Positions 3,727-53,764 of a DNA stretch of 64,000 bases are shown here, in pieces; within the stretch, counting starts at the first letter, position 1, and every line of letters begins with the position of its first letter. The stretch lies in the IMG/VR virus record IMGVR_UViG_3300009103_000001, positions 62,001 through 126,000 of that record; one strand, given 5' to 3'. Below the pieces are notes generated by a model. The model searched no databases, was not told where the DNA came from, and saw only the letters and a program-made list of their open reading frames with translations. Made by a program: the position numbers and the translations under genes.

Positions 3727-4728
3727 ATGAGAAATATTATAAAAAAAATATTAAAAGAAAGTTCAGATTTTGATTGGGTTAGGGATATTGAAGTTGAGAC
3801 TGATTTAACACCGTCACAAATTGTTCATAGATATGATTCTTTACCAAGTGAGATTGTTGGCCCAATGATTAGTAATGGTTTTTTTGATGTATACTATGAA
3901 GACGCTGCCGGAAAATATATTTTAAAAACTGATAGTTGGTGTGACTTTATACCATTATTTAAAAATATTGATAGTCGTTATGGGTATATGGGTAGAGGTT
4001 TAGCTGAAAGAATATTTTGTGATGATGAGGATTATTGGGAACCATATGATTCACATGATTTAGTTTATGATTGGATAAACCAAGTTTGGGATTTTGTTAC
4101 GCGAGATAAAACTTTATACAAATATATAGTAGAATGGATTAATGATAATCTTATTGGTGATGAAATGCATTTTGAGAGAAAAGAAACAACTTTAACAAAA
4201 GAAGATGTTCTTGATTGGTCTGCTGATTCTGATGTTTTGGGTGAAATGATTGATGAATTAGATGTTTTTGAAGATTTAAAACTTGAATTAACTTGGGCCT
4301 ATGGTTCAGCATATAATGTTGCGGCTAGAGATGGAATATATAACTCAGCTGTTGGAGCTGTAATGGATTTCTTTGGTAAAGGTGAGTGGGTACCCAAAGA
4401 AAAGACAGCGAAGTATACATTAAATTTTGACATCACAGATTTAATACAAGATGTTTTAGTGGAGGGAATAGAAAATTGTTGGGACCAATGTAGTAAATAT
4501 TGGAACCCAAAAAACAGAGATTTGGGGGACCAAACAGAAGAAGAAGCTTTTGAAGAGTGGTGTGAAGAATGTTGGGATTTCCCTTTTAGTGAGTTCGGTA
4601 ATTTTATTGATTTTTTTGAATTTTACTTGGATGATAGGGATGAATTATTAACTCCAAGGTTTGATGAATACCCAGATGATAGTAAGATATATCCTTATTT
4701 TGTAGAAGATGTGTATGATAGAATATGA
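3727..4728 (+). CDS. Leader-bearing acidic protein (MRNIIKKILKESSDFDW)
   Basis: Start moved from TTG 3604 to ATG 3727, which follows ATATTTAT at 3712 and begins the shared leader. Confidence 0.8.
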   Translation: MRNIIKKILKESSDFDWVRDIEVETDLTPSQIVHRYDSLPSEIVGPMISNGFFDVYYEDAAGKYILKTDSWCDFIPLFKNIDSRYGYMGRGLAERIFCDDEDYWEPYDSHDLVYDWINQVWDFVTRDKTLYKYIVEWINDNLIGDEMHFERKETTLTKEDVLDWSADSDVLGEMIDELDVFEDLKLELTWAYGSAYNVAARDGIYNSAVGAVMDFFGKGEWVPKEKTAKYTLNFDITDLIQDVLVEGIENCWDQCSKYWNPKNRDLGDQTEEEAFEEWCEECWDFPFSEFGNFIDFFEFYLDDRDELLTPRFDEYPDDSKIYPYFVEDVYDRI

Positions 4729-6785
4729 GTAAAACTAAAATAAATAATAATGATTTTGAATGGGCCAAAGACATCCCATTAATTATGGATACTTGTGAAG
4801 CGTATGGTATATTAAAACCAGGTGATGAAATTATTATTGATGCGATAGATAATTGGGAGGATAACCCAAATCAATGGAATGATACTGATGAGATACAAAC
4901 CTTTTATAGTGTTAAAGCAAAGGTATTAGCTTTAGATGAGTGTAACAATATACATAGAAATAATGAAAGTAATGCTAATACAATTCTAGTATCAATAGAA
5001 GAGGATGGTTATTATGGGTTTGATGATTTATGGGTTGAAGATTTTGTTGGGACATTACCATCACAGTGTCAAAAAGATAATTGTATGTTTTTAATTTGTG
5101 ACACAAATGAGGAAGAATACCAAATAAAATTAATTGAACCATCGTTAAATGAGTCTGATGATTTTAAATGGGTTGATGGGATACCTAAAGATTATTACCC
5201 ACCAGACTTAGAGTCTGGACTTAAAGGTTTAGAAAAATGGGTGGGACAAGCTTATCAAATAGATGATGAGATAGGCCTTTCTGTTCAGGATGTAAAAGAA
5301 AATCCGAACAAAGAGAATATTCAAGATTTAATAAATGTTCTTAAACATTGGAAACCATATCATGATGGTGATGAAGTTTATTGGGCCGTGGAAGACCTTA
5401 TTTCTTCAATAAACCCATTTAGGTTTCAAGACTTAAATAATATGGGATTATTTGAATCTGATTTGGATTGGGTTAATAATACATCAAATAAGATACAGAA
5501 CACTGGTATTGGTCACGATGGACATATAATTTCTTTACAAGAAGTTTATTTCGATTTTTTAAGAACAATAGCTAAGGTTGAGGGTAATTATAACCCACGA
5601 CTTGAATCACACGCTACATTAGACACCAAATATACTAGAAAAGTAAGGGATTATTTAAATTTGAACAGTAGAGACTATCAAGGATTAGCACGTGAATTAC
5701 TTCGTATAGGTTTGGATGAAGCTTTTAAAATGTATTTTGATAATAAGCCACAATTAAGTGAATCTGATGAATTAAATTGGGTTAAGAGCACTGGTTTAGG
5801 TAAAGTAGATTTAAGAGATTGTAAACCTGGTGATATTTTAATCACTAGAAGTGGTAAAACTGTTGAGTATGTTGGCCCAACGGAAAAAGGTAATTATTAC
5901 GACCACGTAGTAAAATATAATGATGGCCATAGTTATGGTAGTAGGACACACGATGGTTATGTGTTTAGGAAAAATAGGCGAGATGATGATGAAGATATCA
6001 TTCATGTGTTAAAAGAATATAAAAAAACAATAACTGAGGCAGCAGGGATTTCATTTGAAGTGAGAAAATGGGGTGAAATTATCTATAATGAGATAATGAA
6101 TAACCCTGATGAGAAAAAAAGGTTAATCATTGATGGTTATGACCACCCTGAAGCGTTCAACGGATTCCCAATAGACTATGTTGTGATAGATTTTTACGAT
6201 AAATTAACGGGATATGGTCAAGAACATTCAGGATATGATAAAGATGGTAACTATGTTGTATTATTATACATACAACCGCAACTAATAAATAATGAATATA
6301 GAGGATATGATTTAAAATCGGCATTAAATCATGAAATGAAACATGCTTGGGAGGACTATCAAAGAGTATCAAAAGGTTATACTAATATTGAACAAACTAA
6401 AGAATCACAAGAGTTATATAATAAAGATTTCATACATTTAATGAGTGATGAAAATATTAAAGGGCCCATTAAAACAGTGTTAAAATATTTTTATTATTTA
6501 ACCAATTTAGAAAAAGGTCCTTATATGGAGAATGTTTATGATAGAAATCCGGCGTATGAAAATATGATTAGAAAAATTATATCTAAAGATTTTGAACAGT
6601 TTAAAGACCGTTTTGATTTAGATGTTAATTGGCATTTAGTAAATACAGCTTATGATATACCATTTGTAAAAAAATTTAAAACTCCATTAGATTTTATTGA
6701 CTATAGTTCTTCAGAACTTAAAAAAAGAGCAATTAAAGTTTTAAAAAAAATTAATAAAATGAAATACATACATGGAATGTTGTAA
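4725..6785 (+). CDS. Putative multi-module polyprotein with C-terminal HExxH metallopeptidase-like domain
   Basis: Internal linkers LNESDDFKW, LFESDLDW, LSESDELNW and ITE; HEMKH at ~6330. Confidence 0.8.
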   Translation: MSKTKINNNDFEWAKDIPLIMDTCEAYGILKPGDEIIIDAIDNWEDNPNQWNDTDEIQTFYSVKAKVLALDECNNIHRNNESNANTILVSIEEDGYYGFDDLWVEDFVGTLPSQCQKDNCMFLICDTNEEEYQIKLIEPSLNESDDFKWVDGIPKDYYPPDLESGLKGLEKWVGQAYQIDDEIGLSVQDVKENPNKENIQDLINVLKHWKPYHDGDEVYWAVEDLISSINPFRFQDLNNMGLFESDLDWVNNTSNKIQNTGIGHDGHIISLQEVYFDFLRTIAKVEGNYNPRLESHATLDTKYTRKVRDYLNLNSRDYQGLARELLRIGLDEAFKMYFDNKPQLSESDELNWVKSTGLGKVDLRDCKPGDILITRSGKTVEYVGPTEKGNYYDHVVKYNDGHSYGSRTHDGYVFRKNRRDDDEDIIHVLKEYKKTITEAAGISFEVRKWGEIIYNEIMNNPDEKKRLIIDGYDHPEAFNGFPIDYVVIDFYDKLTGYGQEHSGYDKDGNYVVLLYIQPQLINNEYRGYDLKSALNHEMKHAWEDYQRVSKGYTNIEQTKESQELYNKDFIHLMSDENIKGPIKTVLKYFYYLTNLEKGPYMENVYDRNPAYENMIRKIISKDFEQFKDRFDLDVNWHLVNTAYDIPFVKKFKTPLDFIDYSSSELKKRAIKVLKKINKMKYIHGML

Positions 6786-37624: not shown

Positions 37625-38407
37625 ATGAATTTTGGTACTGTTAAGAATATATTTGTTGAAAAACTTATAGAATCCCATATTTCTGGTGAAAAAACAGGTA
37701 AAAACTTATATAAAAAGTTTTTAAAAACACTTAATGAAAGTGAAACATTAAAGACAGCTTTTGTTGTTTATAAGAATATTGAAAGTAATACAATTAGTGA
37801 TAAATTTGAGGCAAACCATTATTTAAAAGAAAATTTATCGTTAATTAATAATTTTACAGGAAAAAAATCATTAGTAGAAGAAACTAAAAAATTAATAGCA
37901 ATTTTAAAAGAAAATGATATTAATTTAGATGTTAAATCTAATAACTTACACGAATCTTTAGAAATACTTTTAACTAAAACTAGTAGTTTAAAAACCATAA
38001 ACAAATTACACGAATCTAGAATAAATGTTATAGATTGGTTAATTTCTAATAAAGATAGGGAAGAAAAAAGTGATTATGTTAGGGAAAATATAAATCCTAA
38101 GAAATTTTTAGATATAGCAACAAATAAATTTAATGAAAGATATTCAGAATTAACTGAAGAAGAAAAAAATATTTTAAAGGTACTTAAAGAATCTGACGAT
38201 AGTAGTTTAAAAAATATGGTTTTAAAACTAGTTAAAGATAACATTAACATTATAAATGAAAATTTGGATAAGTATTCAAATAATATGGATGTTAAAGGTA
38301 AGTTATTAGAAACTAAAGATAGGGTTTACAGAATGGTTGATAGTGATGATGATTTAGGTAATAAAATTTTAAAATTATATGATTTAAAAAATAGTATTAA
38401 TGGGTAA
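37625..38407 (+). CDS. Hypothetical head-module protein (helical, many LxE sites)
   Basis: CATATTTATT at 37601; directly after the portal. Confidence 0.8.
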   Translation: MNFGTVKNIFVEKLIESHISGEKTGKNLYKKFLKTLNESETLKTAFVVYKNIESNTISDKFEANHYLKENLSLINNFTGKKSLVEETKKLIAILKENDINLDVKSNNLHESLEILLTKTSSLKTINKLHESRINVIDWLISNKDREEKSDYVRENINPKKFLDIATNKFNERYSELTEEEKNILKVLKESDDSSLKNMVLKLVKDNINIINENLDKYSNNMDVKGKLLETKDRVYRMVDSDDDLGNKILKLYDLKNSING

Positions 38408-38915
38408 GATGTTTGGGTTTATTTTGGAGAATTTTGGGTTCAACTGTAAATATGAGTTTATGGGTTCAATGGTACACACACAAGTACTAGCTTTAACATT
38501 ACCTATAGCCGGCATTAGTTCAATAATTGAATCGTACTTTGGTTTACAGGGTTTAACAGTCCTATCTTTTGTGTTACTAATAACACTTGAACTTATATCG
38601 GGTATATGTGCGTCTAAGGTAAATAAAGAAAAAATCTCTTCTAGAAGGTTTAGTAGGTTTGGTTTTAAATTATTTGTATGGGTCACATTATTATTTATTT
38701 TAAATAGTTTAAGATTGGAATATTCCACATACGATACAACAATAGGTAAAACATCTTATTTATTATTTAATTGGTTACATAGTACAGTTTTTATTTATGT
38801 TAATTTAGAATATCTAATATCAGTTTTAGAAAATTTAGGGGTTATATCTGGTAAGAAAAAAGGTACATTAATTTCAGCAATTAAAAATAAACTAAAAAAC
38901 ATTCTTAAAAATTAA
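38400..38915 (+). CDS. Putative holin (phage holin 4-like)
   Basis: Multiple TM segments; ELISGICAS...ISSRRF...K...EYLISVLENLG. Confidence 0.7.
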   Translation: MGKMFGFILENFGFNCKYEFMGSMVHTQVLALTLPIAGISSIIESYFGLQGLTVLSFVLLITLELISGICASKVNKEKISSRRFSRFGFKLFVWVTLLFILNSLRLEYSTYDTTIGKTSYLLFNWLHSTVFIYVNLEYLISVLENLGVISGKKKGTLISAIKNKLKNILKN

Positions 38916-39329: not shown

Positions 39330-40460
39330 ATGAAAAAAGTTTTTTTAGAATACGTTTGGTTGGACGGAAATCAACCACAACAATTAAGAAGTAAAACTAA
39401 AGTTGTAAAACCTGAAGATATTAGAAAATATACTGATTCGGGGGTTATAAACCCCGAATATTCGGGATTTATTTGGGATTTACCTAAATGGTCTTTTGAT
39501 GGTAGTTCAACAAAACAGGCTAAAGCTGGAAAGGGGGAAAACACTGATTGTGTTTTAAAACCTGTATTTTCTTGTGATGACCCATTTAGAGGTGATTATC
39601 ATTACATTGTCCTTTGTGAGGTTTTAAATCCAGACGGAACCTTACACCCAACAAATAAAAGAGGTGAGTTAAGGGAGTTTATGGAAAAAAATAAAATAAC
39701 GGACTCTAAAGTTAGTTTAGAAAAAGCCAATTGGTTTGGTTGGGAACAAGAATATACTTTAACCACAAAACCGAATTTTAAAGAAGGTGAAGGATTACCA
39801 CTTGGGTTCAGACCTAATGAAGAACCTAGACCACAAGGAGATTATTATTGTGGTGTTGGAGCAGATAATATCACAGGTAGAAGAATTGTGGAAGAACATT
39901 TAGAAAAATGTGTTGAAGCTGGTTTGGATATCTCAGGTATTAACGCGGAAGTTATGTTAGGGCAATGGGAATACCAAATTGGACCTGTAACATCTCTTGA
40001 AGGGTCGGACCAATTATGGGTTTCTAGATATATTCTACAACGAGTGGCCGAAGAAAATGGTGTTAAAATATCATTTCACCCAAAACCAAAAACTGGTGAT
40101 TGGAATGGTTCAGGATGTCATGTCAATTTCTCAACCCCTGAAATGAGAAAAGAAGACGGTATTAAATTAATTAAAGATACAATGGCTAAATTAACACTTA
40201 CTCATGATGAACATATTAAAGTATATGGTTTATATAATGAAAAACGTATGACAGGTGAACATGAAACTTCTAGTATAAACGATTTTAGTTATGGTTATAG
40301 TACAAGAGATACTAGTATCAGAATTCCAGCACAGTCAATAATTGATGGTAAGGGTTATTTTGAAGACCGAAGACCCGCTTCTAATTGTGACCCATACAGT
40401 GTAGCATTACGTATGTTAAAAACTGTATATAACACTGTGAATGAAACAGTAGAAGTTTAA
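39330..40460 (+). CDS. glnII: Glutamine synthetase type II
   Basis: EYVWLDG, LRSKTK, WSFDGSST, EQEY, NAEVMLGQWEYQIGP, DWNGSGCH, SIRIP and YFEDRRPASNCDPY. Confidence 0.95.
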   Translation: MKKVFLEYVWLDGNQPQQLRSKTKVVKPEDIRKYTDSGVINPEYSGFIWDLPKWSFDGSSTKQAKAGKGENTDCVLKPVFSCDDPFRGDYHYIVLCEVLNPDGTLHPTNKRGELREFMEKNKITDSKVSLEKANWFGWEQEYTLTTKPNFKEGEGLPLGFRPNEEPRPQGDYYCGVGADNITGRRIVEEHLEKCVEAGLDISGINAEVMLGQWEYQIGPVTSLEGSDQLWVSRYILQRVAEENGVKISFHPKPKTGDWNGSGCHVNFSTPEMRKEDGIKLIKDTMAKLTLTHDEHIKVYGLYNEKRMTGEHETSSINDFSYGYSTRDTSIRIPAQSIIDGKGYFEDRRPASNCDPYSVALRMLKTVYNTVNETVEV

Positions 40461-42172: not shown

Positions 42173-42213
42173 AGTAATAAATGTTTTAAGTGATTTTTAA
42201 ATAATTAATTGAA

Positions 42214-42243
42214 CAAATATAATAATATTATTTTTATTGGCAA
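42214..42243 (-). promoter_or_regulatory. Bacteroidota-type promoter TTG-N19-TATATTTG
   Basis: Consensus match upstream of 42172. Confidence 0.6.
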
Positions 42244-42289
42244 TGGAATAAGTGAATTTATTGCATATTTATTAAGAAAAGTATTAAAT

Positions 42290-43018
42290 ATGAAAATATT
42301 AAAACCAGGAGATGAGGGATATGGTTATATCATTGAGTATGATGCCGGATTTATTTCACCATCATTAACATGTAAAGACGGTGTGTGTTCTAATTCTAAT
42401 TTGATTAAAGAATTTAAATCTGGTTTAAATTTCGGATTAGATGGGGAGTTACCAGATAAAATAGAATTATACGCTGTTCTTCAAAAATGGGGTGTGGAGA
42501 ATAAAAATGGTAGAGTATATACAGAAGAAATTTTAAAAAGAGAGGCAAAAAGATACCAAGAATTTATAGATATGGGTACATCACTCGGTGAATTGAATCA
42601 CCCAGAATCATCAATTATTGATGCTGACCGTGTATCACATAGAGTTACAGAAATATGGTGGGAAGGTAGAACATTAATGGGCAAAATCGAATTAGACACA
42701 ACACCAGGTTATTTAAGTGGTGGTGTGATTAGTTCTGTTGGTGATAAAGTTCTTAATATGATTAGAAAGGGATGGACTGTTGGCATATCTTCTAGAGGTG
42801 TCGGTTCGTTAAAACAAGAAGGTGGTAAAAATGTTGTTCAAGACGATTTCGAATTAATATGTTGGGATATTGTAACATCACCATCTACACCAGGTTCTTG
42901 GATATCGATAAGTCAACAAGATTTGACACCATATACAGAATCAGTTAAAAAAAATAATAATTTATTATCCGAAGAAGAACATACATTATTGAATAATTTA
43001 AATAAATTTTTATTATGA
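42290..43018 (+). CDS. Prohead core protein protease (T4 gp21-like)
   Basis: NKNGRVY, LGELNHP, VSH, GISSRGVGS and DIVTSPSTPGS; start moved to ATG 42290 after CATATTTATT at 42264. Confidence 0.92.
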   Translation: MKILKPGDEGYGYIIEYDAGFISPSLTCKDGVCSNSNLIKEFKSGLNFGLDGELPDKIELYAVLQKWGVENKNGRVYTEEILKREAKRYQEFIDMGTSLGELNHPESSIIDADRVSHRVTEIWWEGRTLMGKIELDTTPGYLSGGVISSVGDKVLNMIRKGWTVGISSRGVGSLKQEGGKNVVQDDFELICWDIVTSPSTPGSWISISQQDLTPYTESVKKNNNLLSEEEHTLLNNLNKFLL

Positions 43019-43296
43019 AAAAAATAATTAAATTAAACGAAAACGATATAGGGAACTTGGTTAAGAAAATAATCAAGGAAGATAGAACTGATTTTGAAAA
43101 AGTTTATATAATAGTTAATAGAGAAATACACGGTTATGAGGCGGTAGAGAATGTATATAAGACGTTGGAAGATGCGGTAAAAGATGATGTATTTGACAGA
43201 TACGAACAAACGCCAGAAATACTAAACGACCCAAATGATGGGGGGTTATATGGTATGAGTGAAACATTTTATATATTACCTTATAAAGTAAATTAA
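43015..43296 (+). CDS. Leader-A cargo protein (MKKIIKLNENDIGNLVKKIIKE)
   Basis: Leader shared with six other ORFs. Confidence 0.8.
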   Translation: MKKIIKLNENDIGNLVKKIIKEDRTDFEKVYIIVNREIHGYEAVENVYKTLEDAVKDDVFDRYEQTPEILNDPNDGGLYGMSETFYILPYKVN

Positions 43297-43313
43297 AAAT
43301 AATTTTTATTATA

Positions 43314-43634
43314 ATGAAAAGAATTGAAAAACAAAAGAGACGGTTAATTGAAGAAGCTAATAAAAGGGTTCTAAAGGAATCCGCTGAATTGACTGAATTA
43401 CACGATGATGTATTATACTTAACACCTGAATACCGTTTGACTGGTAATAGGGGTGAGGGTGTTCGTGTTTATGAAGAAATAATGGATACTGTTAATTCAT
43501 ATGGTATAGAACCATCTGATGAGGCTAAAGCTTTAATTAAAAGACTTGAATACGACCTTAGTGCTTTAGAGGGTTTCGATGAAAGAGTGGTAAAATTATA
43601 TGAATCTTTAAGTGGAATAAATATTAATGAATAA
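43314..43634 (+). CDS. Leader-C cargo protein (MKRIEKQKRRLIEEANKRVLKE)
   Basis: Leader related to those of 54431 and 54613. Confidence 0.8.
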   Translation: MKRIEKQKRRLIEEANKRVLKESAELTELHDDVLYLTPEYRLTGNRGEGVRVYEEIMDTVNSYGIEPSDEAKALIKRLEYDLSALEGFDERVVKLYESLSGININE

Positions 43635-43641
43635 AATAATT

Positions 43642-43980
43642 ATGAAAAAAATAATTAAATTAAACGAAAACGATATAGAAAATTTGGTTAAGAAAATAAT
43701 CAAGGAAGAGGGTGAAGAGTATAGAAGTAAAGACCCAGACCAATTGGATATGTTTGATGGCACAGTTAAAGATAGGGAATTAGAACAAGAATATAAAGAA
43801 TGGGAAGAAGAGGATGATAAAATGACAGATATATATAATGATATTTATGACACACTTGAACCGGTATTGAATAATATTCTTGATAAGTATGGAGAAGATT
43901 TTGATTTAATCGCCAATGATGACATGATTCAAAACATAGTAGAGGATTGGATGTATCCAGATGGAGGTGATGAAGATTAA
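43642..43980 (+). CDS. Leader-A acidic cargo protein
   Basis: Start moved to ATG 43642 at the leader. Confidence 0.8.
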   Translation: MKKIIKLNENDIENLVKKIIKEEGEEYRSKDPDQLDMFDGTVKDRELEQEYKEWEEEDDKMTDIYNDIYDTLEPVLNNILDKYGEDFDLIANDDMIQNIVEDWMYPDGGDED

Positions 43981-44010
43981 AAGGATAATAATATTTATAA
44001 TAAAATAATC

Positions 44011-45156
44011 ATGAAAAAAATAATTAAATTAAACGAAAACGATATAGAGAATTTAGTTAAAAAAATAATCAAGGAAGATAGGTTACAAGAATTAGATAAA
44101 TTAACTTATGATAGTGCAGCTGAAAAAGCTTCAGAAAGAGGTATACCCGCTTTATCTGATAGATTTAGAAAACATGGACAAGAACATGGTCTAGGAAAGG
44201 AAAAAGAACAATTCACTTTAGTGATTGACCATAGCAGTCTTGGAGAAAGGGAATATACTTATAAAGTTGAGTCTGTGGAGGAAATGGAAGATGGTAAAAC
44301 TTTAAAAATAAAATTAGTTGACATAGATAACCCACAAAATGTTCATACATATACAGGAAGTATTCGACTCACCAACCCAAACAAAAACAGTAGGTCACTT
44401 AAACGTGGGGATTATAAACTAATTTTATATTTTAGAGATAATTATTATACTTTAGCTAAAACAAGAAAAGATGCTAAAAATTTATTAAATATGTTAATTA
44501 AAAATATGGGTGGTAAACACATGTTCCACCCACTAAAAAATATAGACCCTAGAACTTTAACTCTTGGGTATTCAAATTTTGGTGAAAATATTAAAAGAAG
44601 AAAAACACTTAGTGAAGATAGAACTGATTATGAGATGAGTGGTGCTAGAAGTCGTAAAGACTATGTCTCTAATCCAAGAGAAAGAGATATTACTGGAATG
44701 TTCGGTAAATATTCTGAAGATGTACCACCAATGGTAATTAGATACATGAGAAAAAATCCTGAAGCTATTGTAAAAAGATTATATAAAATATATGGTGATA
44801 AAATATATGATTATATACCACAACAAGTAGATATGGATTTAGTTAGAAATAACCCGAATGATGCCGATTTAGGGGCACAAGTTAGAAGTCGTTTTAATTC
44901 TGAAAATATTAATGAATGTGGTGAAGGGGGTTATATGACAGAAGATGGTTGTGTTGATTATGTCGAGGAAAATAGAAGACCTAGAAGAATATCTGAATCA
45001 AACGGTAAAGGTTGTGCTGATACAGAAAAAGGTTGTATTAGAAAAAGAAAAAGTGGTTGGGTAATATTAAATAATAAAAAAGGTGGTGTTTGGAGAAAAT
45101 GTTCTAGTAGAAAAAACTGTGAAGAACAATTAGATGCATATCACGCAAATCAATAA
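44011..45156 (+). CDS. Leader-A multi-module protein
   Basis: ATATTTAT at 43991; internal LQE, LSE, INE and ISE sites separate modules. Confidence 0.85.
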   Translation: MKKIIKLNENDIENLVKKIIKEDRLQELDKLTYDSAAEKASERGIPALSDRFRKHGQEHGLGKEKEQFTLVIDHSSLGEREYTYKVESVEEMEDGKTLKIKLVDIDNPQNVHTYTGSIRLTNPNKNSRSLKRGDYKLILYFRDNYYTLAKTRKDAKNLLNMLIKNMGGKHMFHPLKNIDPRTLTLGYSNFGENIKRRKTLSEDRTDYEMSGARSRKDYVSNPRERDITGMFGKYSEDVPPMVIRYMRKNPEAIVKRLYKIYGDKIYDYIPQQVDMDLVRNNPNDADLGAQVRSRFNSENINECGEGGYMTEDGCVDYVEENRRPRRISESNGKGCADTEKGCIRKRKSGWVILNNKKGGVWRKCSSRKNCEEQLDAYHANQ

Positions 45157-45158
45157 TC

Positions 45159-45464
45159 ATGAAAGTTAAAAATATGTTATACGCGGGTCTTGGTATGGGT
45201 ACAATGGTATCTAAGAAGACTTATGAAGCTTATGAAAATTTTGTAAAAAGTGGTAAGGAGTTGGACCCAACAGTAAGTTCTACTATTGATGATTTTTTTA
45301 GTGATTTGGAAAATCAAAAAAAAGAAGTTAGAAATAGAGTTGAGGAAATTTTTAGTTTAACAGCGGATAAATTAGGGTACATCAAATTAAATGAGTATGA
45401 AAATTTATTAAAAAGAATAAAAACTTTAGAAGCTGAGTTAGCACAAGAAAAAAATAAAAAATGA
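45159..45464 (+). CDS. Phasin-like coiled-coil protein
   Basis: LYAGLGMG...FVKSGK...LLKRIKTLE resembles PhaF/PhaI-like phasin family proteins. Confidence 0.55.
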   Translation: MKVKNMLYAGLGMGTMVSKKTYEAYENFVKSGKELDPTVSSTIDDFFSDLENQKKEVRNRVEEIFSLTADKLGYIKLNEYENLLKRIKTLEAELAQEKNKK

Positions 45465-45805
45465 AAAAAAGAATTGTAAAACTAAACGAAAACGATATTG
45501 AAAGACTCGTTAATAGAATTATAAAAGAAGATGAAAAAGTATCATCTTCACAACTTAAACAAAAAATGAAACAAACTAGTATGGATACTGGTAGTTTAGG
45601 TTTAACACCAAAAGAAAGAGAAGTCTTTAGTACAGCAATAGATATGTTAAAAGATTTTTTCGCACAACAAGGAAATCAGGCAACAGGTAAAGCTTTAAGT
45701 TTATTTAATAGATTTAAGGATAGTTTAAAAGATGTTAAAGCTGAACCAATTAAATCACCAGAAGAGGAACAAAATACTGGTACAGATGAATTCGCGGACC
45801 AATAA
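45461..45805 (+). CDS. Leader-A cargo protein (MKKRIVKLNENDIERLVNRIIKE)
   Basis: Shared leader. Confidence 0.8.
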   Translation: MKKRIVKLNENDIERLVNRIIKEDEKVSSSQLKQKMKQTSMDTGSLGLTPKEREVFSTAIDMLKDFFAQQGNQATGKALSLFNRFKDSLKDVKAEPIKSPEEEQNTGTDEFADQ

Positions 45806-46296
45806 TGGGATTAATTCGTAAAATAATAAAAGAAGAACTTCTTAAGGAAGTTGGGGGATATGATGACCCAACTATAATGGCTCAACATTCTGGTGCAACA
45901 TTACGTTCACTAATAGAAGTATTGTCTGGTATGTTAGAGGCTATTAAAAGATTAGCTCAAAAAATATCAAAAGGCGGGTTAGATAAATTTAAAGGTAGAG
46001 ACGTATTATTTAATTTATCTGACATAATAAATGAAGGATTAAGATTAACAGGTTTATTAATAAAAGATTTCACAGAAGATGATATTATATTTGAAGGTAA
46101 AAAGTTTATTGAAAAAATGAATGAGTTTAAAAGAAAGATTAGACTTTTATCTAATCTTGGTTCAAGTTATACAGAAAAAGACTATAATGAGAAAATATTA
46201 GAATTGATATTTAAATTGGAACCGACAATAAACAGTTATGGTAATAGTTTAAATGATGTTAATAAAAGATTCATGGATAGGTTCGATATGATATAA
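45805..46296 (+). CDS. Leader-B cargo protein (MGLIRKIIKEELLKE), helical
   Basis: Leader nearly the same as that of the sigma factor at 22511. Confidence 0.8.
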   Translation: MGLIRKIIKEELLKEVGGYDDPTIMAQHSGATLRSLIEVLSGMLEAIKRLAQKISKGGLDKFKGRDVLFNLSDIINEGLRLTGLLIKDFTEDDIIFEGKKFIEKMNEFKRKIRLLSNLGSSYTEKDYNEKILELIFKLEPTINSYGNSLNDVNKRFMDRFDMI

Positions 46297-46823: not shown

Positions 46824-48029
46824 ATGGCAGAGAACAGAAAGTCTATCATCGATGAGGCTCTCTTAGAAAGCGAACAAATTGAAAAAGCTTTCGAAGCTAA
46901 TGCAAAAGAAATACTGACTCAAACTATGAGTTCAGAAATTGAAGAAATGGTAAAGGAATCTTTAGAAGGTTCAAGTAGCTTAACAGAAGACGAAGATGAA
47001 GAAATGTTAGATTTACCTGATATGGGTGATGATGACGAAGATGCCGTCGCTGTTGCTGGTGACGTAGAAGACCTAGAAGACATGGGAATGGAACTAGGCG
47101 ACCTTGAAGGTCTAGAAGACCTTGAAGGGGATGATAACGAAGGACTTGATATCGAAATGATTGATTTGACAGACGCTGACGACACTGAAGTTGTTAGAGT
47201 TTTCAAAAAAATGGGACCAGACGATGAAATCGAAGTGGTTCAAGATGGTGGAAATATTGATATTAAGGATAATGAAACTGGCGCAGAATATAGAGTAGAA
47301 CTTGGTGGTGAAGGTGAAGACCTTGAAGACCTTGAAGGTGATGAAATTGAAATGGAAGACTTAGAAGACGTAGACGTTGAAGGTGATGAAATTGAAATGG
47401 AAGACCTAGAAGGTGATGACACTGAAGGTGAAGAAATTATTTATCAAGTAGAACTTGATGATGAAGATGACACCGTTGAAGAAGCTAGCAGAACATTAGG
47501 TAAGGGAAGTAAAAACTACCCTAAACGTAAAGGTTTACCAAAACCTATAGCTAGTGGAGCTAAGAATGAGTCAATAAAACCAAAGTTCTTAAAAATGATG
47601 AATGAAAATAAAGTTCTAAAAACTGATATCGAAAAAGTTGAATCTGAAAATAAAGAGTTAAAAGAAGACTATAATAAAATGGTTGACGCTCTTAAACAGT
47701 TCAGACAAAAACTTAATGAGGTTGCTGTGTTTAACAGTAACTTAACTTATACAGTTAGATTATTTACCGAACACTCAACTACTAAAGATGAGAAAGTTGA
47801 TGTAATCAAGAGATTTGATGAAGCTAAAACTCTTAAAGAATCTAAAGCTACTTATAAAAATTTAGTTAAAGAAATATCTAAGACAAAGGCTCCAATTAAA
47901 GAATCTATTGAGGAAAAAATTAACGAAACAAAATCTAGTGGTTCAGCACAGGTAACTGAATCTAAAGTTTATGTACACCCAGAGTTAGAAAAAATGAAAA
48001 ACTTATGGGAATATGAGTACAAAAACTAA
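46824..48029 (+). CDS. Prohead scaffolding/core protein (T4 gp22 position)
   Basis: Acidic low-complexity middle, C-terminal coiled coil, many LxE sites; immediately upstream of the major capsid gene. Confidence 0.8.
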   Translation: MAENRKSIIDEALLESEQIEKAFEANAKEILTQTMSSEIEEMVKESLEGSSSLTEDEDEEMLDLPDMGDDDEDAVAVAGDVEDLEDMGMELGDLEGLEDLEGDDNEGLDIEMIDLTDADDTEVVRVFKKMGPDDEIEVVQDGGNIDIKDNETGAEYRVELGGEGEDLEDLEGDEIEMEDLEDVDVEGDEIEMEDLEGDDTEGEEIIYQVELDDEDDTVEEASRTLGKGSKNYPKRKGLPKPIASGAKNESIKPKFLKMMNENKVLKTDIEKVESENKELKEDYNKMVDALKQFRQKLNEVAVFNSNLTYTVRLFTEHSTTKDEKVDVIKRFDEAKTLKESKATYKNLVKEISKTKAPIKESIEEKINETKSSGSAQVTESKVYVHPELEKMKNLWEYEYKN

Positions 48030-48064: not shown

Positions 48065-49888
48065 ATGGGATATTTATTAAAATCTGGTGAGGTTGGAAAT
48101 ATCGGACTTAAGCATCAAAAAGCTATCCGTGAAGCAACCGTAAACAAGTGGAATGACCTAGGATTTCTTGAAGGTTTAGATGGGCATGTTAAAGAAAACA
48201 TCGCTCTTCTTTACGAGAACCAAGCGTCAACACTTATTAATGAGACAACAGATACGGCTGGTGGAGCATCAACTGGTTCTTTTGAAACAGTAGTTTTTCC
48301 AATCGTAAGGCGTGTTTTCTCAAAATTGTTAGCAAACGACATCGTTTCTGTTCAAGCATTAAATTTACCAATAGGTAAACTTTTCTATTTCGTACCAAAA
48401 GTATCGGATAGAGTTGAGAGTACATCTCCATCTTTTGCTGGTGGAGCATCTGGTGCTACTGCATCACATGGAGCACCAATAATCTGTCACTGTAACACAA
48501 CAGACTGTAATCCTACGACTTACTCTGAATGTGCTAAAAATATGTATGATAGATTTTATGATGACGGAATGTGGGACCAATCAAAAGGTCAAATAATGTT
48601 ACACGTTGATAACGGTACTATGGTAGTGTTTACTGCTTGTACTGACGCAACACTTGGTGTTCCTCATGAATTCATTGGTGGTGTTACTGCACAAGCTGGT
48701 GACGGTTCTGTTAGAAGTCAAATTGTACAAATTTGTAACTTTAGTACAGCTGGAGCTGGTAGACTTTTAGGTCCTGATGGAAATGAAATGGATACTGAAT
48801 CTTTCTTAGCATCAATTGCTGTTACACCTACTGGTACTTTAGTTGATAAAGATGGTTTAACAATTGCTGAGGCTGGTGACCAATTACCAGTTAGAGTTGT
48901 TACACAAAAATATGGTAGAGGTATCGTTTCTTATGGTGATATTTGTGACGCTGAAGGATGTATATTCTTAGAAGTTGATTTAACTCACCCAGTATGTGTA
49001 GAATGTGGTGATGGTACTTTCGATGGTTATATCGGAGCAGCATCTGGAACAACAGCTATTGTATCTGGTGTAGGTTCTAGTGACTTAGGAGGTGTAAACC
49101 TAGCAGTTACTTGGAGGTCTTACCAAGACCTTGAAGAAGAGTGTGAAATGGGAGAAGTATCTTTCGAACTTGATTCTGTTACAGTATCGGTTACTGAAAG
49201 AAAATTAAGAGCTACTTGGACTCCTGAATTAGCACAAGATGTGTCAGCGTTCCATAACATTGATGCAGAAGCTGAATTAACAGCATTACTTTCTGAACAA
49301 GTTGCAGCAGAAATCGACAGGGAAATCCTTAGAGATTTAAGAACTGGGGCGGCTTGGACATTAAGATGGGATTATAACGGATGGAAAAGGTTACCAAATA
49401 ACAACGGTTACACTCAAAAAGATTGGAACCAAACGTTGATTACAGCGGTTAACCAAATTTCAGCTCAAATCCATAAGTCTACTCTTAGGGGTGGTGCTAA
49501 CTTCGTAGTTGTATCTTCTGAGGTATCAGCCATTATGGATGACCTTGAATACTTCCACGTATCTAACGCAGCTCCAGAACAAGACCAATACAATATGGGT
49601 ATTGAAAGAGCTGGTTCTCTTGGTGGACGTTACACTGTATACCGTGACCCTTACGCTCCAGCACACTCGGTGTTAGTTGGACACAAAGGTAAATCACTAT
49701 TGGATACTGGGTATATTTACGCTCCGTATGTACCATTACAGTTAACTCCAACAATGTACAATCCATTTAACTTTGTACCTATCAAAGGTATAATGACGCG
49801 TTACGCGAAAAAGATGGTTAATAACAGGTTCTACGGACATATCCGTGTGGACGGTTTACGTACATTTGATGTTAGAGAATTGAGATAA
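48065..49888 (+). CDS. Major capsid protein (T4 gp23-like) with Cys-rich insertion
   Basis: PIVRRVF..LLANDIVSVQ, RKLRATWTPELAQD, EIDREI, YAPYVPLQ and GIMTRY. Confidence 0.95.
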   Translation: MGYLLKSGEVGNIGLKHQKAIREATVNKWNDLGFLEGLDGHVKENIALLYENQASTLINETTDTAGGASTGSFETVVFPIVRRVFSKLLANDIVSVQALNLPIGKLFYFVPKVSDRVESTSPSFAGGASGATASHGAPIICHCNTTDCNPTTYSECAKNMYDRFYDDGMWDQSKGQIMLHVDNGTMVVFTACTDATLGVPHEFIGGVTAQAGDGSVRSQIVQICNFSTAGAGRLLGPDGNEMDTESFLASIAVTPTGTLVDKDGLTIAEAGDQLPVRVVTQKYGRGIVSYGDICDAEGCIFLEVDLTHPVCVECGDGTFDGYIGAASGTTAIVSGVGSSDLGGVNLAVTWRSYQDLEEECEMGEVSFELDSVTVSVTERKLRATWTPELAQDVSAFHNIDAEAELTALLSEQVAAEIDREILRDLRTGAAWTLRWDYNGWKRLPNNNGYTQKDWNQTLITAVNQISAQIHKSTLRGGANFVVVSSEVSAIMDDLEYFHVSNAAPEQDQYNMGIERAGSLGGRYTVYRDPYAPAHSVLVGHKGKSLLDTGYIYAPYVPLQLTPTMYNPFNFVPIKGIMTRYAKKMVNNRFYGHIRVDGLRTFDVRELR

Positions 49889-49910: not shown

Positions 49911-49940
49911 AAAGGAGGAACATATGTTCCTCCTTTTTTT
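49911..49940 (+). terminator. Intrinsic terminator after the capsid gene
   Basis: aaaggaggaaca/tgttcctccttt stem plus T-tract. Confidence 0.85.
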
Positions 49941-49972: not shown

Positions 49973-50140
49973 ATGCCGTATAAAGTAAAAGGTAAATGTG
50001 TTTATAATGCCAATACTGATGAGAAAGTAGGTTGTACTAAGGGTTCAGTCAAAAAATATCTTGCCGCATTAAATGCTAATGTGGATGAAAATATTATTAA
50101 AAAAGTTGTACAGGAAACCTTTAAAAGGGTTGGCATTTAA
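49973..50140 (+). CDS. Small basic Cys-containing late protein (55 aa)
   Basis: MPYKVKGKCVYNANTDEKVGCTKGSVKKYLAALNANVDENIIKKVVQETFKRVGI*; TATTTATA at 49952; missed by the ORF track. Confidence 0.7.
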   Translation: MPYKVKGKCVYNANTDEKVGCTKGSVKKYLAALNANVDENIIKKVVQETFKRVGI

Positions 50141-50368
50141 TTTTATAAAAATAAAATACGTGAAACAGTTTTTTTTATTTTTTTCTTGATACGTATTCTT
50201 CTTATACGTGAAACTCTATTTTCAATTTCGAATAACTTACTTATGTTATCGTTAATTTCTATTATTTCTTTTCTTTTTTTCATAATGCATTAAGTATTAA
50301 ATATCAAATAATTCTCAAAAGTATCAAAAATTTAATAATAAAACAAGATATTTATAAAAAAGATTTTA

Positions 50369-50803
50369 ATGAAAATTAAAAAAATCATAAAAACTATTTT
50401 GGAATCAGAATTTGACTGGGTTAAAGATTCTGTTTTACATTTTTGGGATATGAATAAAAAATATGTTGTGGATGTTTCAAAGTTAGAAAGATACCCACCA
50501 ATGAGTCTTTCACCAACTTCTGATAGGTATACAGATATATTTATATCAGATATTATAGATTATGGTAAAGAAATAGGGTATGATATAACGGATTTAGGTA
50601 GTACAGCTGATATACAACAACGAGTGCAAGGTTCTTATACCGTTCCTCATGATGTATGTTATATATATTTTAATCCAAACAAATTTGTAGAGTGGGATAT
50701 GTGTGGTATAGACGACCCAACTTGGGATGGTGAATATGAGTTAATGGATGCGGAGAGTTTTATTTATTATATGGAGAATAATTTTATTAAGAATGAACAT
50801 TAA
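50369..50803 (+). CDS. Leader-B cargo protein (MKIKKIIKTILESEFDW)
   Basis: GATATTTATA at 50347. Confidence 0.8.
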   Translation: MKIKKIIKTILESEFDWVKDSVLHFWDMNKKYVVDVSKLERYPPMSLSPTSDRYTDIFISDIIDYGKEIGYDITDLGSTADIQQRVQGSYTVPHDVCYIYFNPNKFVEWDMCGIDDPTWDGEYELMDAESFIYYMENNFIKNEH

Positions 50804-51842
50804 AAAAATTATAAGAGAAGAGTTGGACGATTTTGATTGGGCTAGGGATGATATCTACTTTTCAATAGACTATATTCTAGGTAAACAGATGTATTTTAGG
50901 CATAGTAATATAAATGAACTTGAAAGAGAATATAAAGCTTATAACAATGACAGAATACAACAAATACCAAAAAATAAAATAGTCTTAGGTAATATTAAGT
51001 GGACTAGTATGTTTACGGCAAATTATGTTAAAAATAATATAGCACACATCTATTTACAAGACAGCACTAGTTTACAATATTCAGTGGATATGGTTGAATT
51101 TTATGTAAATAGTGGTATATGGGCTTTAGAGGATGATAATGGTAATATTATTAATGATTTCTCTGGCCAATATTTAAAAGAATCAGAGTTGGATTGGATT
51201 CAAAAATCTGAACCAGATAGAAAAGATATTAGAAGTTTCAATAAAGAAAGGTATAAAACCACTCTTAATTATAATAATGCTGAAATAGGGGATAAATTTA
51301 TCCCACCTGGTAGTCATATGGTATGGACCGTTGATGATAAAGAATTTTGGCGTGGCAAATGGGGTAATGACGAAAATGGAGACCCTGAATATTATAGATA
51401 TTTTATTATATGGATAAAAAATGAGAGGGGTGACCTCAAAAGAAAGTATTATAATAAAACGAATAAATTATTTCCAGGTACTTATAGACCTTGGAGAAAA
51501 ATAGTTGACTCTAATATTAATGAATCGAAAGAGTTTGATTGGGCAAAAGAAATTAAACCTGAAATGACTGCTGAAGCTGTACCACTATATTATAATAAAC
51601 CTCTTTTTTGGTATCATCGGGGTGAACCTAGGCAATGTTGGGGGATGCCTACCATTTATTGGTTATCAAAAAGTTATGTCACTGAAAGGGGTGAAAATAT
51701 ATCTTTATTATGTTATGATGACGGATGTGATGTAGAATCAAAAATTGAATGTAGTGCATTTTATGACTATACAATTGCTAATATGTTTAATGAGGGGACA
51801 CTTAGATTTCAATCACAGTTAAGTGATATTGAACCAACTTAA
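50793..51842 (+). CDS. Putative three-module polyprotein (MNIKKIIREELDDFDW; LKESELDW; INESKEFDW)
   Basis: Start moved to ATG 50793; internal linkers at 51174 and 51516. Confidence 0.8.
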   Translation: MNIKKIIREELDDFDWARDDIYFSIDYILGKQMYFRHSNINELEREYKAYNNDRIQQIPKNKIVLGNIKWTSMFTANYVKNNIAHIYLQDSTSLQYSVDMVEFYVNSGIWALEDDNGNIINDFSGQYLKESELDWIQKSEPDRKDIRSFNKERYKTTLNYNNAEIGDKFIPPGSHMVWTVDDKEFWRGKWGNDENGDPEYYRYFIIWIKNERGDLKRKYYNKTNKLFPGTYRPWRKIVDSNINESKEFDWAKEIKPEMTAEAVPLYYNKPLFWYHRGEPRQCWGMPTIYWLSKSYVTERGENISLLCYDDGCDVESKIECSAFYDYTIANMFNEGTLRFQSQLSDIEPT

Positions 51843-53359: not shown

Positions 53360-53764
53360 ATGAAAAAGAAAGTAATTAAATTAAACGAAAACGATATAGA
53401 AAATTTGGTTAAGAAAATAATCAAAGAAGAAGATAAGGAAAAAGTGACAACTTTAACCAGACATCCAGCTTATCCAATTATAGATGAATTGGAAATGACT
53501 TTGGATGAGTTAAAAACAAAATTTAAAAGAGATATCGCAAATAGTGTTTCTGGAGCAGATGGATATCATAGTGAGATAGATACATTCGTGTCAAATTTTA
53601 ATAAATTTATTGGGAAAGTTTCTGATTTGAAAAGTAAGATAAATGACCATCAAATAGCGTCAAAAAAGAAACAAGAGTCAAACGCTCAAATGCAAGAAAG
53701 AAAAAGAGCTCATTGGGATAGAAAAGAAAAAGCTAGAAATGAGGGTAGTAAATACTCATATTAA
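53360..53764 (+). CDS. Leader-A cargo protein
   Basis: MKKKVIKLNENDIENLVKKIIKEE; GATATTTATT at 53333. Confidence 0.85.
   Translation: MKKKVIKLNENDIENLVKKIIKEEDKEKVTTLTRHPAYPIIDELEMTLDELKTKFKRDIANSVSGADGYHSEIDTFVSNFNKFIGKVSDLKSKINDHQIASKKKQESNAQMQERKRAHWDRKEKARNEGSKYSY

What the first reader, a model, noticed from the sequence alone, without database searches (positions are those of the whole stretch)
50793..51842. Second polyprotein candidate with three E-S-x-x-D-W-delimited modules
Seen: the leader IKKIIREELDDFDWARD is followed by LKESELDWIQK (51174) and INESKEFDWAKE (51516), giving three unrelated ~110-125-aa segments. The neighbouring gene 50369 has the same junction once. This independently repeats the architecture of 4725-6785.
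Basis: partly seen in the sequence, partly recalled or inferred. Interest (0 to 1): 0.75.

Follow-up and report, generated by a model that had tools for sequence, protein, structure and literature searches.

The report
Shuffled phage modules joined by conserved linkers
One gene of a T4-like marine phage strings together three unrelated small protein domains, each preceded by the same short flexible peptide that recurs about 40 times in the genome. Related phages add, drop and re-join whole domains exactly at that peptide, so it probably marks where a phage protease cuts and sorts the pieces, although no cutting has been shown.

Summary
ORF 50793-51842 (349 aa) holds three copies of the motif [LIV]-x-E-[SE]-x(1-3)-[DE]-[FL]-x-W-[IVA]-[KR]-[DE].

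- The window holds 11 copies. The 210-kb genome holds 27 strict copies against 0.2 expected.
- Conservation is at the protein level, not the DNA level.
- AlphaFold2 gives three confident domains. Exactly the three motif segments are disordered.
- The three domain families are unrelated, even by profile comparison.
- In relatives each domain occurs alone, first, internal or last in proteins carrying 1-8 motifs.
- The closest relative lacks module 1, and the crossover lies in the D-W codons of the motif.

The host genome is T4-like, with a Gp23 capsid protein and an S77 prohead protease. A related N-terminal tag (KKIIKEE) heads about 34 proteins, including a cluster between the protease and scaffold genes. 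The operon shares a promoter-like element with the terminase and portal genes.

Best reading (about 0.45): the motif is a T4-CTS-like targeting and processing signal cut after the conserved Glu, so the ORF is a polyprotein of about 12-14-kDa head-packaged accessory proteins. Cleavage is inferred, not shown.

Rivals: uncleaved beads-on-a-string with a docking peptide, or cleavage by an HExxH module found in the same family.

Verdict: a new variant of known kinds (T4 internal proteins, polyvalent proteins).

The parts
50346..50355 (+). Promoter-like element AGATATTTAT, 13 nt upstream of the ATG of the two-gene leader operon
   Evidence: The window holds 11 copies against 1.08 expected. The same element sits 12-14 nt upstream of the large terminase (33595) and portal (35698) genes.
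50369..50803 (+). Neighbour gene: N-terminal leader (MKIKKIIKTILESEFDWVKD) plus a single 124-aa module
   Evidence: No Pfam or PHROG hit.
50793..51842 (+). Focal ORF, 349 aa: leader-D1-linker-D2-linker-D3
   Evidence: The full-length homolog P0001 is 64% identical.
50793..50849 (+). N-terminal leader, aa 1-19 (MNIKKIIREE + LDDFDWARD). Candidate cut after I-R-E (E9, codon 50817-50819).
   Evidence: pLDDT below 50. The same leader heads about 17 genes in the genome.
50850..51170 (+). Module 1 (aa 20-126), alpha/beta domain, pI 4.9
   Evidence: pLDDT 80-92. Occurs as a stand-alone gene in P0025, P0028, P0030 and P0041, and at other positions in 14 or more relatives.
51171..51215 (+). Linker 2 (aa 127-141, YLKESELDWIQKSEP). 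Candidate cut after L-K-E (E130, codon 51180-51182).
   Evidence: pLDDT below 50. The recombination joint with relative L089 lies in the D134-W135 codons.
51216..51515 (+). Module 2 (aa 142-241), beta-rich domain, pI 9.5
   Evidence: Stand-alone in P0031, internal in P0014 and P0029, first in P0002-4.
51516..51554 (+). Linker 3 (aa 242-254, INESKEFDWAKEI). Candidate cut after I-N-E (E244, codon 51522-51524).
   Evidence: pLDDT below 50. Matches the internal-motif consensus N-[LI]-N-E-S-x-[DE]-[FL]-[DE]-W.
51555..51839 (+). Module 3 (aa 255-349), alpha/beta domain, pI 4.6
   Evidence: Stand-alone in P0018. Follows M1 directly in P0005, P0013 and P0016. Precedes a TM-lysozyme segment in L082.
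42209..43018 (+). T4 gp21-type prohead protease homolog (candidate processing enzyme)
   Evidence: PF03420 Peptidase_S77, 88.8 bits, above the curated cut-off.
48065..49888 (+). Major capsid protein (T4 Gp23 family), directly upstream of the leader operon. Its N-terminal propeptide region holds L-Y-E (49-51) and I-N-E (58-60).
   Evidence: PF07068, 240 bits. Alignment to mature T4 gp23*. Terminator-like hairpin at 49911-49936.
43015..45805 (+). Head-cluster genes with a second shared leader, MKKIIKLNENDIENLVKKIIKE[DE]: 43015-43296, 43627-43980, 44011-45156, 45461-45805. A fifth copy lies at 53360-53764.
   Evidence: They lie between the protease and the acidic scaffold-like 401-aa gene (46824-48029). 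This expansion is absent from more distant relatives.
45805..46296 (+). Conserved head-cluster protein starting MGLIRKIIKEE (the DFDW-type leader without DFDW)
   Evidence: Orthologs in L082 and L086 start MNIRKIIKEE.
4725..6785 (+). Sister multi-module ORF with four motif copies. Its last module (6000-6782) has an invariant HExxH.
   Evidence: P0029 joins this terminal module with an M2 homolog in a single ORF.

Best explanation
Shown:
- ORF 50793-51842 encodes three independently folding, mutually unrelated domains of about 100 aa.
- Each domain is preceded by a conserved, disordered peptide of about 15 aa: [LIV]-x-E-[SE]-x(1-3)-[DE]-[FL]-x-W-[IVA]-[KR]-[DE].
- The first copy carries the extra N-terminal tag MNIKKII.
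- The peptide is a protein-level motif present on about 40 modules of this 210-kb T4-like phage genome, and in over 100 metagenomic relatives.
- It is the exact point at which modules are gained, lost and re-joined in frame.

Inferred:
- The peptide is a targeting and processing signal comparable to the capsid-targeting sequence (CTS) of the T4 internal proteins.
- The N-terminal tag brings the precursor into the prohead core.
- The T4 gp21-type prohead protease encoded at 42209-43018 cuts C-terminal to the conserved Glu of each [LIV]-x-E (after E9, E130 and E244).
- This would release three proteins of about 12-14 kDa that stay in the head and enter the host with the DNA as fast-evolving accessory factors. 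An anti-host or anti-defence role is a guess.
- Because every module starts with the same peptide, recombination between any two copies yields a new in-frame, still processable combination. That would explain why stand-alone genes and fused polyproteins are interchangeable.
For: Motif:
- It is real and is selected at the protein level. There are 27 copies against 0.2 expected. Information sits in codon positions 1 and 2, not 3.
- The linkers are disordered and the domains are independent.
- The modules are unrelated to one another.

Module mobility:
- M1, M2 and M3 each occur as a single-module gene and at different positions in proteins of up to 987 aa.
- Four relatives carry different module sets in the same MCP-downstream locus.
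- L089 is 91.7% identical in M2-M3 DNA but lacks M1. Its crossover lies in the GAT-TGG (D-W) codons: 35/45 nt match the window leader before W, and 26/27 nt match linker 2 after W.

Protease logic:
- [LIVM]-x-E lies within 12 aa upstream of W in 56/59 N-terminal and 88/102 internal copies. The figure for random windows is 18%.
- T4 gp21 cuts after Glu in short motifs such as ITE-6 and LTE-619 of Alt (PMC5694885).
- The T4 CTS is a 10-19-aa N-terminal propeptide on otherwise unrelated internal proteins, with processing determinants at residues 8 and 10 (PMC9026906).
- The window encodes an S77 protease and a Gp23 capsid protein.

Link to the head:
- The heptad [KR][KR]II[KR]E[ED] occurs 34 times, almost always within the first 25 residues.
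- It heads five unrelated small proteins between the protease and scaffold genes, plus a conserved head-cluster protein.
- Relatives whose MCP is at most 66% identical lack both tags.
- The leader operon lies directly after the MCP gene in five relatives. It begins with the AGATATTTAT element shared with terL and portal.

Module size: about 109 aa (IQR 95-122), which is in the range of the 8-20-kDa T4 internal proteins (PMC9026906).
Against: - No cleavage product, virion proteome or cultured relative is available. tblastn against 50,697 phage records found nothing.
- The conserved part downstream of the Glu (D-F-D-W-I-K-D) has no counterpart in what is known of gp21 specificity or of the T4 CTS.
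- [LIV]-x-E is a weak three-residue rule.
- The modules are mostly acidic (median pI 5.0), whereas the T4 internal proteins are basic.
- The KKIIKEE tag also heads an ECF-type sigma factor, an HExxH protein and, in L082, a TM-lysozyme fusion. These are not obvious capsid cargo, so the tag may have a more general role.
- Forty or more different cargo modules is a large number.
- The position of the MCP propeptide cut could not be fixed; either L-Y-E or I-N-E fits.
Confidence: 0.45

Rival explanations
1. Uncleaved beads-on-a-string proteins. The ORF is a stable three-domain protein. The conserved peptide is a short linear docking motif that ties every module, fused or free, to one common partner, such as a phage or host hub protein, chaperone or membrane site. 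Fusion only co-delivers the modules.
For: - The motif is long (about 12 conserved positions), acidic-aromatic and disordered, as binding motifs are.
- It is kept on the first module, where no separation from an upstream domain is needed.
- The tag sits on proteins that are unlikely capsid cargo, a sigma factor and a lysozyme fusion.
- There is no direct evidence of cleavage.
Against: - It does not explain why [LIV]-x-E is as conserved as the Trp in internal copies whose upstream sequence is otherwise free.
- It does not explain why stand-alone and internal versions of the same module are freely interchangeable.
- It does not explain the association with the head gene cluster and with a late-type element.
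Confidence: 0.27
2. The polyprotein is processed by a dedicated HExxH metallopeptidase rather than by the prohead protease. The family includes a 250-aa module with invariant HExxH: window 6000-6782, a paralog at genome positions 19.5-20.9 kb, and P0029. It would recognise the extended linker and cut it in cis or in trans, as proposed for the MPTase domain of polyvalent proteins.
For: - HExxH, a downstream E-N-x-Y-D and other residues are invariant in 25 homologs.
- The AF2 model is confident and places HExxH in a long helix.
- Sub-threshold Pfam hits and the named AFDB hits are dominated by zinc peptidase families: M48, M76, HtpX, ImmA/IrrE, DUF2268, SprT.
- The module is the C-terminal unit of the sister polyprotein 4725-6785. 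In P0029 it follows an M2 homolog.
- An extended recognition site would explain conservation over 12 residues.
- Precedent: PMC5512222.
Against: - No significant fold or family match.
- The family also occurs in a relative (G004) without the leader or DFDW motifs, so it is older than, and not tied to, the linker system.
- The focal ORF has no such module, so cleavage would have to be in trans.
Confidence: 0.15
3. The motif is kept mainly as a DNA-level element, either a recombination hot spot or a regulatory sequence. The peptide would be a passenger.
For: Crossovers fall inside the motif. The class-A leaders are about 94% identical in DNA between some copies.
Against: For the DFDW motif, information is concentrated in codon positions 1 and 2 and third positions vary freely, for example GAT/GAC, TTT/TTA/TTG/ATG, ATT/GTT/GCT. 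Amino-acid class is conserved where codons differ. Internal copies have no start codon or promoter role.
Confidence: 0.05

Closest known systems
T4 internal proteins IPI/IPII/IPIII and Alt, with their capsid-targeting sequence, processed by prohead protease gp21
   Same: - A short conserved N-terminal peptide on otherwise unrelated small proteins of a phage with a T4-type head module.
- The peptide contains an I/L-x-E of the kind gp21 cuts after.
- The loci are hypervariable between relatives.
- Product size is about 8-20 kDa.
(PMC9026906, PMC3012670, PMC5694885)
   Different: - Here the conserved peptide extends about 10 residues beyond the putative cut (DFDW-IKD).
- It recurs inside ORFs as an inter-domain linker.
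- It marks about 40 modules.
- The modules are mostly acidic.
- By eye there is no sequence similarity to the T4 CTS.
- Packaging is untested.
Polyvalent proteins of phages and conjugative elements (Iyer, Burroughs, Anand, de Souza, Aravind 2017; PMC5512222)
   Same: Multi-domain, highly variable architectures in phage late regions. They are proposed to be delivered with the DNA and processed into separate units. A candidate HExxH peptidase module is part of the family here.
   Different: - The modules here are small, with no known conflict-related Pfam domains.
- They are delimited by one repeated conserved linker peptide, which is not a described feature of polyvalent proteins.
- No recognised MPTase is present.
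Processed head and ejection proteins of giant phages phiKZ, 201phi2-1 and SPN3US
   Same: A T4-related prohead protease cuts after Glu in a three-residue motif. Many different head-internal proteins exist. Diverged paralogs share identical N-terminal propeptides, for example SPN3US gp53/gp54 (PMC5694885).
   Different: Their motif is S/A/G-x-E, on propeptides rather than between concatenated modules. There is no repeated linker and no documented module shuffling.
Conserved pre-toxin junction motifs of polymorphic toxins (VENN in CdiA, DPxGL in Rhs). This comes from my own knowledge and was not checked here.
   Same: A short conserved peptide marks the boundary of exchangeable modules. It serves as the in-frame recombination joint and, in Rhs, as a cleavage site.
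   Different: Those are bacterial secreted toxins with one variable C-terminal module. There is no homology. Here there are several modules per ORF, in a phage.

Membership tests
T4-type CTS-bearing internal head proteins | Encoded by a phage with the T4 head module (Gp23 MCP, gp21-type protease, gp20-type portal) | tested here: met
   PF07068 240 bits; PF03420 88.8 bits; portal phrog_213 at 5.7e-60.
T4-type CTS-bearing internal head proteins | Short N-terminal propeptide shared by otherwise unrelated proteins | tested here: met
   About 17 DFDW-type and 5 class-A leaders in front of unrelated bodies.
T4-type CTS-bearing internal head proteins | Propeptide ends in an L/I-x-E site that gp21 cuts | tested here: inconclusive
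   The sequence rule is met in 56/59 N-terminal and 88/102 internal copies. Cleavage itself could not be tested.
T4-type CTS-bearing internal head proteins | Physically packaged in the prohead core and ejected with the DNA | not testable with these tools
   No isolate or virion proteome is available.
T4-type CTS-bearing internal head proteins | Basic, DNA-associated mature proteins | tested here: not met
   Median module pI is 5.0 and only 3 of 28 modules are basic. In the focal ORF, D1 has pI 4.9, D2 9.5 and D3 4.6.
Polyvalent proteins (Iyer et al. 2017) | Two to 15 distinct domains in one polypeptide, with variable architectures across elements | tested here: met
   One to 8 modules per protein, with shuffled orders.
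Polyvalent proteins (Iyer et al. 2017) | Presence of the recognised conflict domains or LPD domains | tested here: not met
   No Pfam hit in the focal ORF, its sister ORFs or 140 relatives. Atlas leads to LPD11 and MPTase-PolyVal clusters score 0.57 or less, or TM 0.38.
Polyvalent proteins (Iyer et al. 2017) | Embedded processing peptidase (MPTase) | tested here: inconclusive
   An invariant HExxH module exists in the sister ORF and in P0029, but it has no significant family or fold match.
Viral polyprotein in the strict sense | One ORF with several independently folding units separated by accessible linkers | tested here: met
   AF2 gives three domains at pLDDT 80-92, linkers below 50, pTM 0.40.
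Viral polyprotein in the strict sense | Demonstrated proteolytic release of mature products | not testable with these tools
   Needs expression, N-terminomics or virion mass spectrometry.

The most novel reading that the evidence does not exclude
One peptide of about 15 aa would serve two roles at once. It would be a capsid-targeting and prohead-protease processing signal, and also the universal in-frame recombination joint. That would give a lineage of T4-like marine phages a 'cassette polyprotein' system that builds, packages and continually reshuffles 40 or more injected effectors of about 12 kDa. The cargo may extend to a sigma factor and a lysozyme.
Probability: 0.3. Interest if true: 0.85.

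Novelty: new variant of a known kind. Interest (0 to 1): 0.68.

Why it matters
If the linkers are processing and targeting signals, this would be the first case I know of in which a tailed phage encodes true multi-cargo polyproteins with a universal junction. That would extend the T4 CTS idea from single proteins to concatenated, recombining cassettes.

It would also give a sequence rule for listing the candidate injected proteins of an uncultured phage clade. These are likely to be a rich source of unknown anti-host or anti-defence factors.

It would offer a natural modular tag for loading foreign proteins into T4-like capsids.

Even if the proteins are uncleaved, the system is a clear natural example of domain shuffling mediated by a conserved disordered linker. 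One recombination joint has been resolved to two codons.

Tried and rejected
- DNA-level repeat or regulatory element: rejected. Third codon positions vary.
- Tandem paralogous domains: rejected. BLASTP and hhalign find no relation between M1, M2 and M3.
- The motif as a buried structural element of a single domain: rejected by AF2.
- Function of the modules: no result.
  - No Pfam or PHROG hits.
  - No significant PDB fold match for the focal model; the best is E 4.5e-3 to Tudor-like Spindlin, TM 0.14-0.22.
  - BFVD hits only to uncharacterised phage proteins, at low TM.
  - ESM Atlas scores of 0.62 or less.
- Cultured relative with the family: none in 50,697 phage records. Flavobacterium phage immuto has neither motif.
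- Fixing the protease specificity from the MCP propeptide: ambiguous. Both L-Y-E51 and I-N-E60 fit the alignment to mature T4 gp23*.
- HExxH module as a proven peptidase: not achieved. Foldseek on PDB and AFDB and VIA-align wide gave no significant match.
- First MAFFT alignment for AF2 (A1): it mis-placed the M1 fragments on M3. It was replaced by A2, anchored with collinear M1-M2 relatives.
- Literature search for the motif string: nothing relevant found.
Full report
**Context**

The window is positions 62001-126000 of a 210,157-bp viral record with 30% G+C. It is a distant T4-like phage.
- ORF 48065-49888 is a Gp23-family major capsid protein (PF07068, 240 bits).
- ORF 42209-43018 is a gp21-type prohead protease (PF03420, 88.8 bits).
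- The large terminase and portal genes lie at 33595 and 35698.
- The nearest cultured relative by DNA is Flavobacterium phage immuto, and only within the capsid gene. Its MCP is 41% identical over the 259-residue C-terminal segment that aligns.

**The observation**

ORF 50793-51842 (349 aa) carries three motif copies:
- the leader MNIKKIIREELDDFDWARD (W16);
- LKESELDWIQKSEP (W135, from nt 51174);
- INESKEFDWAKE (W250, from nt 51516).

ATG 50793 is the likely start, for two reasons. Homologs begin MNI/LKKII, and the upstream gene ends at 50803. That upstream gene (50369-50803) has the motif at its N-terminus. ORF 4725-6785 has it four times. The window holds 11 copies.

In the whole genome a strict pattern finds 27 copies, against 0.2 expected from residue shuffles. 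Looser scans give about 40 copies. There are two flavours:
- an N-terminal form, M-N-I-K-K-I-I-R-E-E-x-D-D-F-D-W-[IVA]-x-D;
- an internal form, N-[LI]-N-E-S-x-[DE]-[FL]-[DE]-W-[IV]-K-D-[IV]-x-P.

The part they share is [LIV]-x-E-[SE]-x(1-3)-[DE]-[FL]-x-W-[IVA]-[KR]-[DE].

Information content sits in codon positions 1 and 2, and third positions vary. Selection therefore acts on the peptide, not on the DNA.

**Anatomy of the product**

AlphaFold2 was run on an alignment of 48 sequences. It gives three well-predicted domains: aa 20-126, 142-241 and 255-349, with pLDDT 80-92. pLDDT is below 50 for exactly aa 1-19, 127-141 and 242-254, which are the three motif segments. pTM is 0.40, so there is no fixed inter-domain packing.

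The three domains are unrelated to each other and to every other module in the genome by BLASTP. Profile-profile comparison of the three motif-trimmed family alignments gives 0.2% probability for each pair.

None of the three has a Pfam, PHROG, PDB-fold or Atlas match of any weight.

**Module mobility**

The two searches with the focal ORF returned 49 distinct relatives. Mapping the three modules on them shows the following.
- P0001 is M1-M2-M3.
- P0002-4 are leader-M2-M3.
- P0005, P0013 and P0016 have M1 followed directly by M3.
- P0006-8 carry M2 between other modules.
- M1 alone forms P0025, P0028, P0030 and P0041. M2 alone forms P0031. M3 alone forms P0018.
- M1 is the sixth module of P0038 (709 aa). 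It is internal in P0034 (987 aa).

In 147 relatives the motif occurs 1-8 times per protein. W-to-W spacing has a median of 109 aa and an IQR of 95-122.

The locus between the capsid gene and a conserved 246-aa minus-strand gene is hypervariable:
- window: 55-aa ORF, leader-A, leader-M1-M2-M3;
- L002: HNH endonuclease, leader-B, leader-C-M1;
- L008: an HNH fusion only;
- L082: leader-D-M2-E, then leader-M1-M3-(degenerate linker)-TM-lysozyme;
- L086: F-M1-M3;
- L087: leader-G-H-M1;
- L089: leader-Z, leader-M2-M3.

L089 is the closest relative, at 91.7% DNA identity over M2-M3. Its gene matches the window's leader in 35 of 45 nt up to the Trp codon. It matches the window's linker-2 flank in 26 of 27 nt after it. 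M1 was therefore gained or lost by a crossover inside the GAT-TGG codons of two motif copies.

**What the peptide is likely to do**

Several observations connect it with head assembly.

1. [LIVM]-x-E lies just upstream of the Trp in 56/59 N-terminal and 88/102 internal copies, against 18% of random windows. In internal copies it is the only conserved feature upstream. T4 gp21 cuts after Glu in such short motifs, for example ITE-6 and LTE-619 of Alt (PMC5694885).

2. The T4 internal proteins are unrelated small proteins that share a 10-19-residue N-terminal capsid-targeting propeptide. Its processing determinants are at residues 8 and 10. Reviewers have suggested it is a general way for T4-like phages to load diverse proteins (PMC9026906, PMC3012670). 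The present leader, MNIKKIIREE, has the same length and the same I-x-E ending.

3. The heptad [KR][KR]II[KR]E[ED] occurs 34 times in the genome, where I estimate about one is expected. Almost all copies lie in the first 25 residues of an ORF.
   - It closes a second, 24-aa leader (MKKIIKLNENDIENLVKKIIKE) on five unrelated small proteins. Four lie between the protease and the acidic scaffold-like gene, and one lies at 53360.
   - It opens a conserved head-cluster protein at 45805.
   - Relatives with MCP identity of 66% or less have neither this expansion nor the DFDW family. Relatives at 76-90% identity have both.

4. The leader operon starts with AGATATTTAT (11 copies in the window against 1.08 expected). 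The same element precedes the terminase and portal genes at the same distance.

My best reading, with about 0.45 confidence, has three parts:
- the N-terminal tag takes the precursor into the prohead core;
- the prohead protease cuts after E9, E130 and E244;
- three proteins of about 12-14 kDa remain in the head as ejected accessory factors.

Shown: the motif, the disorder, the independence of the domains, the shuffling, the joint, and the genomic associations.

Inferred: targeting, cleavage, the enzyme, and the fate of the products.

**Evidence that does not fit well**

- The strongly conserved D-F-D-W-I-K-D lies downstream of the putative cut and has no T4 counterpart.
- Most modules are acidic.
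- The KKIIKEE tag also heads an ECF-type sigma factor (22505-23050) and an HExxH protein family. In L082 the DFDW leader heads a polyprotein that ends in a transmembrane segment and a lysozyme domain.
- The MCP propeptide cut cannot be placed unambiguously.

**A second candidate enzyme**

P0029 (761 aa) joins three things in one ORF:
- a homolog of the window's 55-aa ORF 49973-50140;
- an M2 homolog;
- the terminal module of ORF 4725-6785.

It thereby links the two 'polyprotein candidates' of the window.

That terminal module (window 6000-6782) has 57 homologs. In an alignment of 25 homologs, H111-E112-x-x-H115 and a downstream E-N-x-Y-D are invariant. Its AF2 model is confident, at pLDDT 90.8. 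Only sub-threshold hits were found, and these are dominated by zinc-peptidase families. No fold match is significant.

The module could be a linker-specific peptidase, like the MPTase proposed for polyvalent proteins (PMC5512222). However, the family also occurs without leaders in a relative that lacks the motif. I rate this rival at 0.15.

I rate an uncleaved multidomain protein with a docking peptide at about 0.27, and a DNA-level explanation at 0.05.

**Comparison and novelty**

The system works most like the T4 CTS/internal-protein system and like polyvalent proteins. It fails or leaves open defining features of both: the proteins are not basic, known domains are absent, and packaging and cleavage are untested.

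The distinctive feature is a single conserved disordered peptide that is both an N-terminal leader and a repeated inter-module linker, and that serves as the recombination joint. I found no description of this.

I classify it as a new variant of a known kind, with interest 0.68.

Noticed in passing
window 43015-43296, 43627-43980, 44011-45156, 45461-45805, 53360-53764: Five otherwise unrelated proteins share a near-identical 24-aa N-terminal leader, MKKIIKLNENDIENLVKKIIKE[DE]. DNA identity reaches 94% between copies and drops to background right after the leader. Four of them lie between the prohead protease and scaffold-like genes. They are probably prohead-core or internal proteins with a CTS-like propeptide. 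The expansion is absent from relatives with MCP identity of 66% or less.
   Followed up: partly
window 6000-6782 (last module of ORF 4725-6785); paralog at genome 19.5-20.9 kb: A conserved 250-aa module with invariant HExxH and a downstream E-N-x-Y-D. It has 57 homologs, many of them stand-alone 258-aa genes starting IKKILRES-AGISFEVREW. The AF2 model is confident, but no significant fold or family match was found. It is a candidate new zinc peptidase family.
   Followed up: partly
window 22505-23050: An ECF-type sigma factor (Sigma70_r2 and r4_2, both above cut-off) carries the KKILKEE N-terminal tag ahead of region 2.
   Followed up: no
window 295, 1031, 15464, 27171(-), 27778, 33573, 35674, 50346, 53332, 57328(-), 61284(-): AGATATTTAT occurs 11 times against 1.08 expected, nearly always 3-22 nt upstream of a start codon (terminase, portal, adaptor-like and leader genes). 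It is probably a phage promoter, perhaps a late one, giving very short 5' leaders.
   Followed up: partly
window 49973-50140: [quoted passage not shown] There it runs straight into an INES...W linker. In the window, its C-terminus (NIIKKVVQE) looks like a decayed leader.
   Followed up: partly
L002 7899-8591; L008 5138-6553; L087 820-2541: HNH-type homing-endonuclease-like genes (in L087 a long unidentified ORF) occupy the same MCP-downstream hypervariable locus in relatives. This recalls segD next to T4 gene 23.
   Followed up: no
L082 10906-12432: A relative fuses leader-M1-M3 through a degenerate linker (LINEDGRKPDMEW) to a predicted transmembrane segment and a Phage_lysozyme domain.
   Followed up: partly
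window 39330-40460 and 38400-38915: A glutamine-synthetase-like gene (Gln-synt_C 66.5 bits, above its cut-off; Gln-synt_N 32.8 bits, just below its 33.4-bit cut-off) lies upstream of the prohead protease gene, and is conserved there in L082 and L086. A holin-family gene (PF05105) lies next to the portal region.
   Followed up: no
window 46824-48029: A 401-aa, extremely acidic protein with repetitive D/E-rich stretches sits directly upstream of the MCP, in the gp22 scaffold position. It contains L-N-E and I-N-E tripeptides near its C-terminus.
   Followed up: no
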